64,000 nucleotides of DNA, taken from positions 39,086,103 to 39,150,102 of the forward strand of contig CM074519.1 of NCBI GenBank assembly GCA_037379345.1, given 5' to 3'. A program made the translations under genes and the position numbers. Under the pieces are notes generated by a model. That model saw only the letters and a list, made by a program, of their open reading frames with translations. It searched no databases and had not been told where the DNA came from. Position 1 is the first letter of the stretch. Every line of letters begins with the position of its first letter. Shown here in pieces: positions 21,269-62,197 of this stretch. Source of the stretch: Perna viridis (Eukaryota).

Positions 21269-24200
21269 ATGACATTGTCTGCTAGGAGGATAGCTATTCT
21301 GTTAGCACTGGCAATATTCAAGTTGTCGGAGCAATGTAGTCCTCCAGGCCCTCCGTTCGTCGCACATCCTCAGAATTTTTTTTGTGATGCAAAGTATCGT
21401 AAGTAAAAAAGTATAGTGTTAATTTTCTTCATTTTATATTCATGCTGATTTCAAATTAGGAATTTGACGACCAATATACTTTTGTTTTAATGATAAAGAA
21501 GCTCGAGTTTTGTTCATGTAAACACGTAGAATTATCATTTCATTGCGACTTTCTTCTTTATTATTTTCACATAAAAGTTTATATTCAACAAAAGGAAAGA
21601 GCACAGACAGATTGAATGAAATTGAGTGTATTTGCGGCATTATTTGTTTAGATATTTGAAGCAAGGGTAAAAACAAAATTGCCTAACTGATAAACTTAAG
21701 GCAATGTTTAAAAGCAAAAGAAATAAAGGAAGAGTTGTATAACAAATGGCAATATCAAGGGAAAGCGGAAGTTGGAAAATACCGCAATGGTCATATTTTG
21801 ATACAAGTATTTTCGATGGAAAAGGTGGGTTTAACAAGGTTTTATAGCACGTTTACCCCCGCTTCAATTTAGGTTAAAAAGTTTCGGTTTATAAAGATTG
21901 AACGGGCAGAAAACAATTGCTTCGGGTCAAAATTGGTAAAATAAGTAGTCAAAAACAGTACAGAAGATATAAACAACAAATAAGTGACAATAAAAAAAGT
22001 ATTTTATTTTTTTACAGGTTCATTTTCTGTAATATCATAATTAATAGAACAATATTTAATCAGTGTAACTGTACCACCTTTGGAAGCAAAATTTATTTTG
22101 CCAAATTATACAAACATTTTTTTCTAACAATTACATGTTCTTATGAATATATCTCGCTTTCTTTATAACTTTTCTTCAAAAGTAGGACTTGACAAAAAGT
22201 CTCTGTGTTTGGACCAGGTGCATTGTATGGGTAAATGTCTCTTGATTTTGTTTGTTTGTTGGGGTTTAACGTCCGAGCAGCAATATTTCAACTATATTCA
22301 GACGATGAACATGAAATTGATAATAAAATGAACATGAAATAAAAATGAGATGGAACACAAGGACAATGGGGTATACAAATTTTGATTGCCACTGCAAATA
22401 GGGAGAGATGGGTAGGGTCGGGCAATTTAGCCTCCTGTGGCGGAGCCCTGTGGTTCCTACTCCGGGAGAATACCACAGTAGGGTTCTTTAACGTGCGAGG
22501 AACGTGGCATCTTTCCCAACACGGTGCACCACTATGGTTTGTGGTCAGGTTTTCCGTATTATAGCCTGACAACCCCAGCATGTAACACGCCAGGGGTACC
22601 CCATTCCACCACCTGGGGCACACATCCCAGTTGCTCTGTGGGCAGAGCGCCCTAGCCCCCGATTAAGGTTCTGAGCACTATTTGATCGCCTTTTACGACA
22701 AGCTTAGCGCTGCTGCAGGCCTATTCTTTTGACATCCGGCCCTGCACGGGTCTTGAAGAATGTTTTGAATTCTTTAATAGCACCTCCTTATCATTTTGTA
22801 GGGTAACGAAAACTTACGGGTATGAGTCTTTTATAAATTTATGAAAAATAATCTTTTTATAAAATCGTTGACTATTTGAAAGAGCAATCAAGTAACCAAG
22901 ATTCTAGCGGCAATCAAAAGAATGAAATCCAGGGACAAAGACTAGACATAGAAAACAGACAAACACAACAAAGAATATAAAATAACCAAAATAATACATT
23001 AAGTAACAAAAGTTAATGAGCAACTCGGACCACTAAAAACTGGGAGCATGGATCATGCGTACCGGTAGGGAGTTAGTGTCCTCTGCTTTTCTAGAAACAC
23101 CGCCGAGTCAAGTCTGGGAAAGACAAAAGAGGAAGGGAAAATTATTACACGTTGAACAAATTGTGCATTAATGAAAAGACTTGCAGACAAATCAATTCAA
23201 AATTGGTGATCAATCTTATGTTATGACATGTGTATAAGCACTTCTCTTTTGCTAAATGTGCAAAATAATTTTTTTCGTATCATTTTCAGTTATGGTCGGT
23301 AATGTTCTAAGCTCTAAGGTCGGGACCATCTACACAATATACAGAATCAGAGTATTAGCTGTTATAAATGTAAATTACATGTCAAACAATTTACACTATA
23401 CGCCAGAATATACCATCTGCGCTATGTTTTAATATCTTTCATAGACGAACAAACGATATTGTGTTAGTTTCGAGGAACGATACTCTCGCTAAAATGTCAA
23501 AGCAGGGTGAAGGAAAAACGAAAATTTAGAAAACAACGTGATGTGTCAAGAGTAGTAACAACAAAAATATTTTGACAAATAAAAACTTAAGTATTTATAC
23601 ACAGACCAACATGCTCTGATTTTACAGGTTAAACATAAATAAGTATTATCATTTTACCGAAATTGATATACACATTAAAGCAATAAGAGTCTAGAGGATA
23701 ACACGTTTTAAAAACAAGTGTTTATACAAAGATATTATTTTTGTCATATGGAAACAATAATATGGTCCTATCATGCTCGTTTACCATGTGTTGTAAACCA
23801 TATGATTCTCATATATGACACATGTAACTTTGTCTGTATAGTAAGAGTGTATATAGTAATATTGAATATGCAACATGTTTTACTTATTCATACAAGTCTT
23901 AATGATGACGTTTTATACCAAAAGGGATTCACAAACTCAGATGTCGGAAAAGTTAAAAGTATATATACCCCAAGTAGTGGTGCAGCATGCGGAACAACAT
24001 TTCGTATAGGGATCACTTACGCCTTTGGAGGTAACTATAATTTGGTGGTTCTGGTAAAGAAAGATATCACATGTTACTCCTTTGCTGCAAACCTTTATTC
24101 AATATATTTAAGTGGTAATGATAGAAATAAGTTAAGTTTGCGATATGCAACTGATGAGTTCAAAATGGATTATTTAATCATTTCTTTAGAAATACTTGAC

Positions 24201-60600: not shown

Positions 60601-62197
60601 TCTGGCATCGTGTGTCAATCCAAAAAGGATGGAATATATACGAGTTCTAACTACGAACGTATTATGGTCGTCATCATGAACTCCTGGATCGTTTCTGATG
60701 TATCCATTTGTACCACAAAAACTGGTTTGTTAACCCTGTGTATGGTATTATTTCCTCTTTTGTCTATCCGGGCGTGATGTTTGAAGACAAAGTGGATGAG
60801 TGTATCTCTAACGGCAAAATATTCTTGCCCTACCGGTGCAACTAGTACATTCTTCAAGTTTTGAATGTATTTCAGGTTGCTTGTATACTTTTGTAAGAGT
60901 AAGTTTACCCTACCGGTGCACTTGGTCCGTTCTCCCAGTTTTTAGTGGAGTCCGAGTTGCTCATTTACTTTTGTTACTTTGTATGTATGATTTTAGTTAC
61001 TTTATGTTCTTTGTTGTGTATGTCTGTTTTCCATGTCTGGTCTTTGTCCCTGGATTACATTCTTTTGATTACCGCTATAACCTTGGTTCCCTTGATTAAT
61101 CTTTGCAATTATCTACTTACAACTTTGGTGGTTATTTTATGTTCTTCATTGAATGTATCTATTTGTATCCATTTTTCTTCTTTCACTTGTTATTCTTGGA
61201 TTGTGTTATTTTCGATTTATGGTTCCCTTTATTACCCGGTTTAACATTTTTTGTCATGACATTTCTTTCCAACATTTTGCTGCACAGAACAAAACACCAT
61301 ACTAGACGAATTTCTCCCTTTTTTTCTGTTTTACGGCGAACCTGAATGTATAGTCTCCGTACAGTGCTATCCATTTTTAAAGAGAATGTATTTTGTTAAA
61401 ACTTACTATGACGACTTTATCATCGACGTCTGAAAAGTGGATGTGTTAACCATAGACACATTCGGTCCAAATAATGATAACACANNNNNNNNNNNNNNNN
61501 NNNNNNNNNNNNNNNNNNNNNNNNNNNNNNNNNNNNNNNNNNNNNNNNNNNNNNNNNNNNNNNNNNNNNNNNNNNNNNNNNNNNNNNNNNNNNNNNNNNN
61601 NNNNNNNNNNNNNNNNNNNNNNNAAAACAAAGCAAATTCGTATACTGAAGTTATATTTACCTGATTTCTCTGGTTACAGCAAATAAGAAAGACGGAAAGC
61701 TTGTTATCCGTATGTTCATGTTCTACTATGAATATTTTAACATGACTGTACAGCAGCACATGTACATGATGAACAAACATGGAAAATTGTCTTACAAAGC
61801 AAATTGTAGATGCAAGGTAAAGGTATTTTAAATAACTGTTTTTTTTTTATTACATCAACAATATTATTAATCATACATTGATAGAGGCATGATAATTATT
61901 CAAGTTACAAGAATACACTAATTTCTATATATTACATGCGAGAGAGATTTCTTTTTTCACATTAAGACTTTTTTTTAAAGTATATATTAGTTGAAGACAT
62001 CTCATATTGTGTTTAGACAGGTCAACAAAGATTTGTCAACTGACATATAATTGTTTCAAATATTTCAGGTATCGGCCGATACCAGTGACAGAACATGTGT
62101 TCCTGGAGAAAACGCATCATGCTATATAAATAATGCAATCTGTAGTTACAACAGACAAAGAGATAAATGTAATTGGATCAATGGCGATACTTGTTAG
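57622..62197 (+). CDS. TIMP-like B6, atypical NTR/TIMP-family secreted protein (193 aa), intact
   Basis: Exons 57622-57751, 58757-58836, 60148-60253, 61680-61816, 62069-62197, GT-AG and in frame. ISEE|CGFPGPPFVIHPQNYFC...IYTPSSSAACG...YKANCRC...CNW. Confidence 0.92.
60263..61104. mobile_element. Penelope-like insertion with inverted ~190-bp tails
   Basis: Tail on - at 60263-60450 and on + at 60917-61104, with an RT-end remnant (YGRHHELLDR) at ~60660. Confidence 0.85.

What the first reader, a model, noticed from the sequence alone, without database searches (positions are those of the whole stretch)
21269..62197. Expanded family of re-engineered TIMP-like proteins that lost the Cys3 disulfide as a pair
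Seen: the B genes keep TIMP exon structure (phases 1,0,1,0) and the HPQ..C (YPQ in B2), AACG, Y..NC and C.W motifs. All five with a readable exon 1 lack Cys3 of the C-X-C N-terminus, and all six lack its partner in exon 4 (type A KKTISSC / KKTINSC versus type B FVIRLSM, LIIRTFM, FSIRAFM, LVIRMFM). The intact proteins have 10 Cys. Established: in TIMPs, Cys1-Cys70 and Cys3-Cys99 (TIMP-1 numbering) pin the N-terminal wedge that chelates the protease zinc. Inference: loss of both partners, four intact but diverged paralogs and canonical TIMPs next door point to a neofunctionalised subfamily rather than decay. It may have a new protease target or a non-inhibitory structural role in shell, byssus or mucus.
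Basis: partly seen in the sequence, partly recalled or inferred. Interest (0 to 1): 0.88.

Follow-up and report, generated by a model that had tools for sequence, protein, structure and literature searches.

The report
TIMP-like genes missing one disulfide
A bivalve chromosome carries a long tandem array of TIMP-like genes, kept by selection and at least one of them transcribed, that have lost one of the two disulfide bonds pinning the protease-blocking tip, so they probably no longer act as ordinary MMP inhibitors; this is a new variant within the known bivalve TIMP expansion.

Summary
The window holds two 12-Cys, C-S-C type TIMP genes (A1, A2). They are followed by six B genes: four intact five-exon genes (B1, B2, B5, B6; 193-196 aa, 10 Cys) and two pseudogenes (B3, B4). 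All B genes lack the Cys3 and Cys99 equivalents. After Cys1 they carry a Pro/Gly-rich insertion of 3-4 residues.

All four N gaps lie in introns or between genes. B1 is a spliced, polyadenylated mRNA in four public runs, with joints exactly at the modelled introns. Pairwise dN/dS among the intact B genes is 0.17-0.29, so they are not decaying.

The paired loss is not special to B. At least 15 further TIMP-like copies downstream, to window +158 kb, also lack both cysteines. A tree needs only one loss.

B proteins are TIMP homologues (profile against A2, E = 2e-18) but fail the C-X-C and 12-Cys criteria. Function is inferred: a remodelled reactive ridge, and so a retargeted or lost inhibition. 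Tandem TIMP expansion, "pseudo TIMPs" and a non-inhibitory byssal TIMP are already published for bivalves.

Two earlier scan notes on this window cover the same genes. One unexamined note flags another TIMP-like gene elsewhere in this genome.

The parts
21269..25670 (+). B1, intact TIMP-like gene (196 aa, 10 Cys). Exons 21269-21398, 23290-23369, 23925-24030, 24510-24649, 25536-25670.
   Evidence: RNA contigs of four runs join 21398>23290, 23369>23925, 24030>24510 and 24649>25536. One 743-nt contig spans all five exons with no mismatch. A poly(A) tail follows 25685.
28428..31646 (+). B2, intact TIMP-like gene (195 aa, 10 Cys, YPQ variant). Exons 28428-28548, 28995-29077, 29836-29941, 30118-30257 (GC donor), 31509-31646.
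   Evidence: No gap inside the gene. Expression was not tested.
33515..37762 (+). B3, pseudogene. Exons 1, 2, 4 and 5 are open; exon 3 (34860-34929) is frameshifted and truncated. An N gap lies in intron 1.
44303..45715 (+). B4, pseudogene fragment. It has exon 2, exon 3 with a stop and exon 4 with a stop. No exon 1 or exon 5 was found.
48739..53939 (+). B5, intact model (196 aa, 10 Cys). Exons 48739-48868, 49567-49646, 52017-52122, 53325-53464, 53805-53939. Gap 51843-51985 lies in intron 2.
   Evidence: Exon 4 aligns to PF00965 positions 90-144 at 17.2 bits, below the cut-off.
57622..62197 (+). B6, intact model (193 aa, 10 Cys). Exons 57622-57751, 58757-58836, 60148-60253, 61680-61816, 62069-62197. 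Gap 61485-61623 lies in intron 3.
21335..21373 (+). B1 reactive-site segment C-S-P-P-G-P-P-F-V-A-H-P-Q. Cys1 is kept, position 3 is Pro, and it has 4 more residues than the A genes.
28488..28523 (+). B2 segment C-S-I-P-P-P-Y-I-L-Y-P-Q. Position 3 is Ile; 3 extra residues.
48805..48843 (+). B5 segment C-S-P-P-G-P-D-Y-V-F-H-P-Q.
57688..57726 (+). B6 segment C-G-F-P-G-P-P-F-V-I-H-P-Q.
24545..24547 (+). B1 codon at the Cys99-equivalent column (Leu).
   Evidence: Alignment; codon.
30153..30155 (+). B2 codon at the Cys99-equivalent column (Thr).
53360..53362 (+). B5 codon at the Cys99-equivalent column (Ala).
61712..61714 (+). B6 codon at the Cys99-equivalent column (Met).
4143..7049 (+). A1, C-S-C type TIMP gene that keeps Cys3 (4215-4217) and Cys99 (6250-6252). 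The exon 2/3 junction is shifted.
   Evidence: Exon 1 matches PF00965 at E = 0.0011.
15081..20102 (+). A2, C-S-C type TIMP gene (12 Cys). Cys3 is at 15153-15155 and Cys99 at 19207-19209.
   Evidence: The exon 1 profile aligns to TIMP-1 residues 1-16.
12116..12253 (+). Lone B-type exon 5 relic with a stop, between A1 and A2.
51843..51985 (.). Assembly gap inside B5 intron 2.
61485..61623 (.). Assembly gap inside B6 intron 3.
33801..33961 (.). Assembly gap inside B3 intron 1.
32450..32592 (.). Assembly gap between B2 and B3.

Best explanation
B1, B2, B5 and B6 are functional, secreted, two-domain proteins descended from TIMPs. They belong to a large tandem clade in this bivalve that lost the Cys3-Cys99 disulfide once, in the clade's ancestor. 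The B subgroup then lengthened the segment between Cys1 and H-P-Q from 5 to 8-9 residues with Pro and Gly. It also replaced the Gly before Cys1 with S-E-E/Q.

Shown: the genes are intact, under purifying selection and, for B1, spliced and polyadenylated. They keep Cys1, its partner in an invariant S-x-A-A-C-G loop, H-P-Q, the Cys13-Cys124 equivalents and the six cysteines of the C-terminal domain. That makes five disulfides.

Inferred: the half of the TIMP wedge formed by Cys1-Cys70 and the C-D loop is still used to bind a partner. The N-terminal arm, which normally lies pinned in the primed subsites of an MMP, is now longer, proline-stiffened and held by one disulfide only. I therefore expect weak or no canonical MMP inhibition. 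My preferred reading is a retargeted binder or inhibitor of another metalloproteinase class.

If the signal peptide is not cut directly before Cys1, the free alpha-amino group needed for zinc chelation is absent. The proteins would then be non-inhibitory or latent.
For: Gene models have consensus splice sites and phases 1,0,1,0.

B1 spliced contigs appear in 4 runs from 3 studies, with a poly(A) tail.

dN/dS is 0.21-0.28 by NG86 with a bootstrap upper limit below 0.45, and 0.17-0.26 by ML.

The Cys1-to-Cys13 segment has dN 0.18-0.32, like the rest of the protein. The signal peptide has dN 0.47-0.77.

In one allele, 4 of 5 coding SNPs are synonymous.

The B profile matches A2 at E = 2e-18 and A1 at 1.7e-14. 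All 10 B cysteines align with A cysteines.

The exon 3 profile hits TIMP-2 residues 63-79, the Cys72 loop, at E = 0.015. B5 exon 4 lies on PF00965 positions 90-144.

Canonical TIMPs validated by Pfam elsewhere in this genome share the intron positions and phases and keep both cysteines.

A single loss suffices on the tree.

From the literature: Cys1-Cys70 and Cys3-Cys99/100 tie the N-terminal segment, and Cys1 chelates the zinc (PMC9409782, PMC3679795). Ala+TIMP-2 is inactive (PMC5410052). N-TIMP-3 carrying T2G, or one or two extra N-terminal Ala, loses MMP inhibition but keeps ADAM17 and ADAMTS-4/-5 inhibition (PMC3003256).
Against: No activity, structure or tissue data could be obtained.

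The joined proteins were not run through Pfam or a structure predictor. Exon by exon, the matches to TIMP models are all below threshold.

Expression was shown for B1 only.

dS is about 1-1.7 and so near saturation, which makes the ratios rough.

Support for the clade lacking both cysteines is moderate (67/82; 65% of bootstrap trees).

No homologue from another species could be retrieved, so the age and spread of the clade are unknown.

The signal-peptide cleavage site was not predicted with a trained tool.
Confidence: 0.6

Rival explanations
1. The B proteins are still ordinary broad MMP inhibitors. On this view the Cys3-Cys99 disulfide is dispensable, and the proline-rich arm replaces its stiffening role.
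For: Cys1, a small residue at position 2 (Ser in B1, B2 and B5), Pro at positions 3-4, the TIMP-2-like S-S-A-A-C-G loop and H-P-Q are all kept and constrained. Relatives in the array have a normal x-x-G|C signal cleavage context.
Against: An 8-9 residue loop replaces the taut 5-residue segment that occupies the primed subsites. B6 and B3 have Gly at position 2, and T2G in N-TIMP-3 abolishes MMP inhibition (PMC3003256). Glu or Gln at -1 in all four intact B genes argues against a free Cys1 amino terminus.
Confidence: 0.2
2. The B proteins have given up protease inhibition and serve as structural, cross-linking or matrix-binding components of byssus, shell or mucus. Scallop Sbp8-1 and sea-cucumber tensilin are precedents.
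For: There is precedent for a non-inhibitory TIMP-like protein in bivalve byssus (PMC5975577) and for tensilin (PMC4807446). The mature B proteins are small, very basic (pI 9.2-9.7) and rich in Tyr (9-13 of about 174 residues). The conserved S-E-E/Q before Cys1 suggests an N-terminal extension.
Against: All 10 Cys can pair, so there is no free thiol of the kind that drives Sbp8-1 polymerisation. The C-D loop and the N-terminal segment are as constrained as the protein core, which is not expected if the wedge were unused. The A proteins are also basic and Tyr-rich. No proteome or tissue data were available.
Confidence: 0.3
3. The B genes are young pseudogenes or annotation artefacts with no protein product.
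For: Two of the six B copies in the window (B3, B4) and several copies downstream (B7, C3) are visibly broken. The B5 and B6 models span assembly gaps.
Against: Four ORFs have stayed intact although dS is about 1 or more between them. dN/dS is 0.17-0.29. All 16 introns of the four intact B genes have consensus splice sites. B1 mRNA is spliced and polyadenylated in four runs.
Confidence: 0.03

Closest known systems
Canonical TIMPs (TIMP-1 to -4; Pfam PF00965, MEROPS I35), including the A1/A2 neighbours and the Pfam-positive TIMP genes on contigs C1, C5 and C15 of this genome
   Same: They share a signal peptide followed by Cys1, H-P-Q and Cys13, the x-x-C-G loop partner of Cys1, and the C-x(1-2)-C domain junction. 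They also share a six-Cys C-terminal domain ending in C-x-W and five coding exons with the same intron positions and phases.
   Different: The B genes have no Cys3 and no Cys99, giving 10 Cys rather than 12. They have 3-4 extra Pro/Gly-rich residues after Cys1 and Glu or Gln at -1. Single exons do not reach the Pfam cut-off.
Bivalve 'pseudo TIMPs' and tandem TIMP expansions (Ma et al. 2023, PMC10755359)
   Same: These are five-exon, tandemly duplicated TIMP-family genes in bivalves. They were flagged for N-terminal changes and for missing the SMART NTR match, and were proposed to be neofunctionalised.
   Different: That paper defines the class by domain-database hits only and never mentions cysteines or disulfides. 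Whether the B/C/D clade corresponds to any of its orthogroups could not be tested.
Sbp8-1, the atypical TIMP of scallop byssus (PMC5975577)
   Same: It is a bivalve TIMP-family paralogue from a duplicated family. No collagenase inhibition was detected, and a structural role was proposed.
   Different: Sbp8-1 keeps all 12 Cys and adds two free C-terminal Cys that cause polymerisation. The B proteins lose a pair and have no odd cysteine.
AceES-2, the hookworm netrin-domain protein, and cnidarian TIMP homologues lacking C-X-C (PMC3679795, PMC4860685)
   Same: They have the TIMP/NTR fold or homology with a reduced or changed N-domain disulfide set. One bond, reminiscent of Cys1-Cys70, is retained in AceES-2.
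   Different: They are single-domain proteins, lack Cys1, or both. They come from other phyla and are not part of a tandem array. The B proteins keep Cys1 and the full C-terminal domain.
Engineered N-TIMP-3 variants T2G, [-1A] and [-2A] (PMC3003256)
   Same: The changes are at the extreme N-terminus of the wedge. The B proteins may carry similar ones: Gly at position 2 in B6 and a possible N-terminal extension.
   Different: These are laboratory mutants that keep all three N-domain disulfides. They lose MMP inhibition but keep ADAM17 and ADAMTS-4/-5 inhibition, which shows only that such retargeting is possible.
Tensilin, the holothurian TIMP-like stiffening factor (PMC4807446)
   Same: It is a lineage-specific TIMP paralogue co-opted for a matrix-mechanical role.
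   Different: It is from an echinoderm and arose independently. No sequence-level comparison was made here.

Membership tests
TIMP (PF00965 / MEROPS I35), canonical inhibitor | C-X-C at the mature N-terminus (Cys3 present) | tested here: not met
   B1, B2, B3, B5 and B6 read C-S/G-P/I/F. A1 and A2 read C-S-C.
TIMP (PF00965 / MEROPS I35), canonical inhibitor | Twelve conserved Cys forming six disulfides, including Cys3-Cys99 | tested here: not met
   The intact B proteins have 10 Cys. The Cys99 column holds Leu, Thr, Ala or Met.
TIMP (PF00965 / MEROPS I35), canonical inhibitor | Cys1 is the first residue of the mature protein, with a free alpha-amino group for zinc chelation | tested here: inconclusive
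   Cys1 is present. The residues before it are S-E-E/Q in all four intact B genes, against x-x-G in every relative. No signal-peptide predictor was available.
TIMP (PF00965 / MEROPS I35), canonical inhibitor | The Cys1 partner (Cys70) sits in the C-D loop x-x-C-G; H-P-Q and Cys13 are present | tested here: met
   S-G/S-A-A-C-G is invariant in the four intact B genes, and H-P-Q (Y-P-Q in B2)..C is present. The exon 3 profile hits TIMP-2 residues 63-79 at E = 0.015.
TIMP (PF00965 / MEROPS I35), canonical inhibitor | Two-domain architecture with the Cys124/Cys127 junction and a six-Cys C-terminal domain | tested here: met
   N-C-R-C plus five Cys in exon 5 align column for column with A1 and A2.
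TIMP (PF00965 / MEROPS I35), canonical inhibitor | Significant match to the family profile | tested here: inconclusive
   Exon by exon, B5 exon 4 scores 17.2 bits on PF00965 positions 90-144 and A1 exon 1 scores 18.5-19.3 bits. All are under the 23.1-bit cut-off. The joined protein was not submitted. Homology to A2 is E = 2e-18.
TIMP (PF00965 / MEROPS I35), canonical inhibitor | Five-coding-exon gene with conserved intron positions and phases | tested here: met
   B1, B2, B5 and B6 have phases 1,0,1,0. The three introns that could be placed in the Pfam-positive TIMP genes T21 and T23 of the same genome have the same positions and phases. Five exons are typical of mollusc TIMPs (PMC10755359).
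TIMP (PF00965 / MEROPS I35), canonical inhibitor | Tight 1:1 inhibition of MMPs | not testable with these tools
   This needs recombinant protein and enzyme assays.
NTR module (netrin-like domain) | Six Cys forming three disulfides in the N-terminal OB-fold domain | tested here: not met
   Only four of the six N-domain Cys remain: the equivalents of Cys1, Cys13, Cys70 and Cys124.

The most novel reading that the evidence does not exclude
The B/C/D clade is a natural class of TIMP-fold proteins that evolution has retargeted away from MMPs. A longer, proline-stiffened arm held by a single disulfide, collagen-like (P-P-G-P-P) in B1, would let them bind a different metalloproteinase class: ADAM/ADAMTS, astacins or microbial collagenases. 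Alternatively, the S-E-E/Q extension would make them latent inhibitors that are activated by cleavage before Cys1.
Probability: 0.25. Interest if true: 0.65.

Novelty: new variant of a known kind. Interest (0 to 1): 0.45.

Why it matters
TIMP engineering tries to make inhibitors selective by altering the N-terminal ridge. Here a natural family, maintained by selection, has removed one of the two disulfides that define that ridge and rebuilt the arm in graded steps: 5, 6, 8 and 9 residues between Cys1 and H-P-Q across neighbouring paralogues.

If the proteins bind proteases, the array is a ready-made series for learning how arm length and tethering set selectivity. If they do not, it is a clean case of a protease-inhibitor fold recruited to another extracellular role in bivalves, next to its canonical relatives.

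It also gives a concrete, sequence-level meaning to part of what has been called "pseudo TIMPs".

Tried and rejected
- The search of protein representatives with B5 exon 4 (46 aa) gave 0 hits.
- The search for homologous proteins gave no candidates, either with the 164-aa open stretch around B1 exon 3 or with the 133-aa stretch around A2 exon 5. Even the A-type TIMP found nothing, so these blanks say only that the collections lack close mollusc relatives in the allowed length range.
- Pfam exon by exon gave nothing for any B exon.
- PDB profile searches found no TIMP for B exons 1, 4 and 5 or for A exon 4. A RecA hit for exon 3 is a repeat artefact of a fusion construct.
- Supplements of PMC10755359 hold accession lists only, with no sequences.
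- Left out: sending the joined (spliced) proteins to Pfam, structure prediction, complex prediction, cluster look-up or the look-up of encoding contigs. A spliced model has no reference and may not be typed. Joined models were built only inside local scripts, from coordinates.
- Pseudogene decay was rejected (see rival explanations).
- Repeated independent loss of the two cysteines was rejected as unnecessary, since the tree needs one change.
- No duplicated sequence flanks any gap.
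Full report
**What is in the window.** Every gene discussed lies on the + strand. A motif scan and an in-window tblastn found two type A genes with a C-S-C-F-P-Q-H-P-Q N-terminus. They also found six type B loci whose exon 1 reads C-S/G-x-P-...-H/Y-P-Q.

I listed GT/GC donors and AG acceptors in the required frames. For B1, B2, B5 and B6, the candidate sites at the ends of the paralogue matches gave five-exon models with phases 1,0,1,0. 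The acceptors have pyrimidine-rich tracts, and B2 exon 4 has one consensus GC donor. The models translate to 196, 195, 196 and 193 residues, each with exactly 10 Cys.

B3 has open exons 1, 2, 4 and 5 but a frameshifted, truncated exon 3. B4 is a fragment with stops in exons 3 and 4 and no exon 1 or 5. It sits just downstream of a frameshifted non-LTR retrotransposon.

**Gaps.** The four N runs lie between B2 and B3, in B3 intron 1, in B5 intron 2 (31 nt before exon 3) and in B6 intron 3 (56 nt before exon 4). No exon or reading frame crosses a gap. Their flanks share no duplicated sequence.

Continuity across the gaps was not shown. The assignment of exons 1-2 and 3-5 to one B5 gene, and of exons 1-3 and 4-5 to one B6 gene, therefore rests on scaffold order. 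B1 and B2 contain no gap.

**The cysteine pattern.** In a full-length alignment built locally from coordinates, all 10 cysteines of each B protein fall in columns where A1 and A2 also have Cys. The two A cysteines with no B counterpart are the third residue of C-S-C and the Cys of K-K-T-I-S/N-S-C in exon 4.

By position these two are Cys3 and Cys99 of TIMP-1. The A exon 1 profile aligns its C-S-C-F-P-Q-H-P-Q..C with residues 1-16 of TIMP-1, and apart from one unrelated peptide every hit at E up to 10 is a TIMP. In TIMPs, Cys1 pairs with Cys70, Cys3 with Cys99/100 and Cys13 with Cys123/124 (PMC9409782). In the B proteins the Cys3 column holds Pro, Ile or Phe, and the Cys99 column holds Leu, Thr, Ala or Met.

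The segment between Cys1 and H-P-Q has 5 residues in A and in TIMP-1. It has 8 residues in B2 and 9 in B1, B3, B5 and B6, and is rich in Pro and Gly.

**Are they real genes?** I laid contigs of four public runs from three studies on 21200-25700. They contain joints at 21398>23290, 23369>23925, 24030>24510 and 24649>25536, which are exactly the four modelled introns. One 743-nt contig covers all five exons without a mismatch. One contig ends in a poly(A) run after 25685, 14 nt past an AATAAA that overlaps the stop codon. The runs are only guessed to be RNA, but spliced, polyadenylated contigs settle that.

One run carries another allele with five coding differences, four of them synonymous.

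Pairwise dN/dS among B1, B2, B5 and B6 is 0.21-0.28 by Nei-Gojobori. No codon bootstrap reached 1, and the upper 95% limits are below 0.45. By maximum likelihood it is 0.17-0.26. dS is about 0.9-1.7, so these are old duplicates and the ratios are rough. A1 against A2 gives 0.14-0.17.

The remodelled Cys1-to-Cys13 segment has dN 0.18-0.32, the same as the rest of the protein. The signal peptide has dN 0.47-0.77.

**Family membership.** Single B exons do not reach significance against Pfam or PDB TIMPs. Three partial matches stand out:
- B5 exon 4 scores 17.2 bits on PF00965 positions 90-144.
- The exon 3 profile hits TIMP-2 residues 63-79, around Cys72, at E = 0.015.
- A1 exon 1 matches PF00965 at E = 0.0011.

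Homology is nonetheless clear through a chain. A profile of the four B proteins finds A2 at E = 2e-18 and A1 at 1.7e-14, for a nominal database of one million sequences.

The genome holds TIMP genes on other contigs whose single exons pass the Pfam cut-off. Two of these (T21, T23) share the intron positions and phases that could be placed. Both have C-x-C and the exon 4 Cys.

The joined B proteins were not sent to Pfam, a structure predictor, the complex predictor or the look-up tools, because a spliced model has no reference. That step is left out here.

Two defining features of canonical TIMPs, C-X-C and 12 Cys, were tested and not met. I therefore file B as a TIMP-derived divergent subfamily, not as a canonical TIMP.

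**The loss is older and wider than the finding.** B-type exon 4 occurs nowhere else in the 723-Mb assembly but in this part of contig C9. I fetched 30 kb upstream and 120 kb downstream and scanned them with per-exon profiles. The array continues to at least window +158 kb. It includes:
- a broken B7;
- three B-like copies on the minus strand;
- three "C" genes beginning C-R-P-x-Y/F-P-I-H-P-Q;
- four "D" genes beginning C-S-F-A, C-Y-P or C-S-P;
- several relics.

Every one of these with a readable exon 1 lacks Cys3. Every one with a readable exon 4 lacks Cys99. A1, A2 and the three canonical genes examined elsewhere have Cys3, and the four of them with a readable exon 4 (A1, A2, T21, T23) have Cys99 as well.

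A maximum-likelihood tree rooted on T21 and T23 places (A1,A2) outside a clade of all copies lacking both cysteines. Within that clade the C genes group together and so do the B genes. The trait needs one change. Support for that branch is moderate: 67/82, present in 65% of bootstrap trees.

So the pair was lost once and then inherited through many duplications. It is not a repeated convergent event, and it is not specific to B.

**What is specific to the B genes.** Two features are. The first is the longest Pro/Gly insertion; the Cys1-to-H-P-Q length series is A 5, C 6, Bm2/B2/B7 8 and B1/3/5/6 9 residues. The second is the motif (K/N)-(L/F/I)-S-E-(E/Q) directly before Cys1 in all four intact genes. 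All relatives, and pseudogene B3, have Gly at -1.

Glu at -1 is very unusual for signal peptidase (general knowledge of the -3,-1 rule; not computed here). The motif is also conserved although the hydrophobic cores of the signal peptides are not. It may therefore belong to the mature protein.

**How it most likely works.** In TIMP-MMP complexes the N-terminal segment Cys1-Pro5 and the loop Met66-Cys70 form the ridge that enters the active site. The alpha-amino and carbonyl groups of Cys1 chelate the zinc (PMC3679795, PMC9409782).

The B proteins keep the Cys1-Cys70 half, with an invariant, TIMP-2-like S-x-A-A-C-G loop. They untether and lengthen the arm that should lie in the primed subsites. 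B6 and B3 also have Gly at position 2.

Published mutants show what such changes can do. One Ala added to TIMP-2 inactivates it (cited in PMC5410052). T2G, or one or two added Ala, in N-TIMP-3 abolishes MMP inhibition while keeping inhibition of ADAM17, ADAMTS-4 and ADAMTS-5. Longer extensions weaken even that (PMC3003256).

My best reading is that the fold and five disulfides are kept and the wedge is still under selection for binding, but that tight canonical MMP inhibition is lost. Retargeting to another metalloproteinase class is somewhat more likely than a purely structural role. If the S-E-E/Q peptide stays attached, the proteins are non-inhibitory or latent.

The mature proteins are about 19.5 kDa, strongly basic (pI 9.2-9.7) and Tyr-rich. 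This is compatible with a matrix or byssal location but is also true of A1 and A2. All of this paragraph is inference.

**Comparison with what is known.** Large tandem expansions of five-exon TIMP genes in pteriomorph bivalves are published. So is a class of "pseudo TIMPs" with changed N-termini, but that work defines them by database matches and never discusses cysteines (PMC10755359).

A non-inhibitory bivalve TIMP, scallop Sbp8-1, is known, but it keeps 12 Cys and adds two free ones (PMC5975577). TIMP homologues without C-X-C are noted in cnidarians, where they were set aside (PMC4860685). The hookworm NTR protein AceES-2 has a reduced disulfide set (PMC3679795).

I found no description of a two-domain TIMP clade that keeps Cys1-Cys70 but has lost Cys3-Cys99 together with an arm insertion. 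My literature and database reach for molluscs was limited, and no homologue from another species could be retrieved.

**Verdict.** This is a real, well-delimited and functional gene family, and a new variant of a known kind. Interest is moderate: it is notable for TIMP structure-function work and for bivalve matrix and immune biology, but it is not a new category.

Noticed in passing
window 4705-5668 (A1 exons 2-3): Compared with A2, A1 has a 1-nt deletion just inside exon 3. The frame is kept only if exon 2 ends at a GT donor at 4818 (phase 1) rather than at the GC donor at 4814 that corresponds to A2's phase-0 site. This is either an intron-phase slide or a broken gene. A1 also has an extra Cys in exon 2, giving 13 Cys in the mature protein.
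   Followed up: partly
window 12116-12253: A lone B-type exon 5 relic with an internal stop lies between the two A genes. It is a trace of an older arrangement of the array.
   Followed up: partly
window 13489-13737: An open frame has a GIY-YIG catalytic domain (Pfam E = 4e-6). It is probably a fragment of a Penelope-like retroelement.
   Followed up: partly
window 40030-43084: A frameshifted non-LTR retrotransposon (endonuclease plus RVT_1, E = 1.5e-16) lies immediately upstream of the 5'-truncated B4. It may mark the event that removed B4's exon 1.
   Followed up: partly
window 22106-23162 (B1 intron 1): A high-copy repeat is present in thousands of RNA-run contigs, at depths up to about 6 x 10^4, with many rearranged joints.
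   Followed up: no
window 25666-25685: The B1 poly(A) signal AATAAA overlaps the stop codon (25668-25670), and the tail is added after 25685. The 3' UTR is therefore only about 15 nt.
   Followed up: yes
G000:C9 39150103-39244500 (window +64 kb to +158 kb; L011-L016, L024-L028): The array continues with at least 15 more TIMP-like copies lacking Cys3 and Cys99: B7, Bm1-3 on the minus strand, C1-C3, D1-D4 and relics. Several are broken: B7 has a stop in exon 4, and C3 has a TAA in exon 3 near window 113525.
   Followed up: partly
window -1074 to -1024 (L017), minus strand: A weak exon-1-like ORF reads G-C-S-C-Q-P-E-I-P-H-D-I-L-C. No other TIMP exons were found in the 30 kb upstream.
   Followed up: no
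window 33581-33583 context (B3) against B1, B2, B5 and B6: Pseudogene B3 has S-I-G before Cys1, whereas its nearest relative B6 and the other intact B genes have S-E-E/Q. The acidic motif was therefore either lost in B3 or arose more than once.
   Followed up: no
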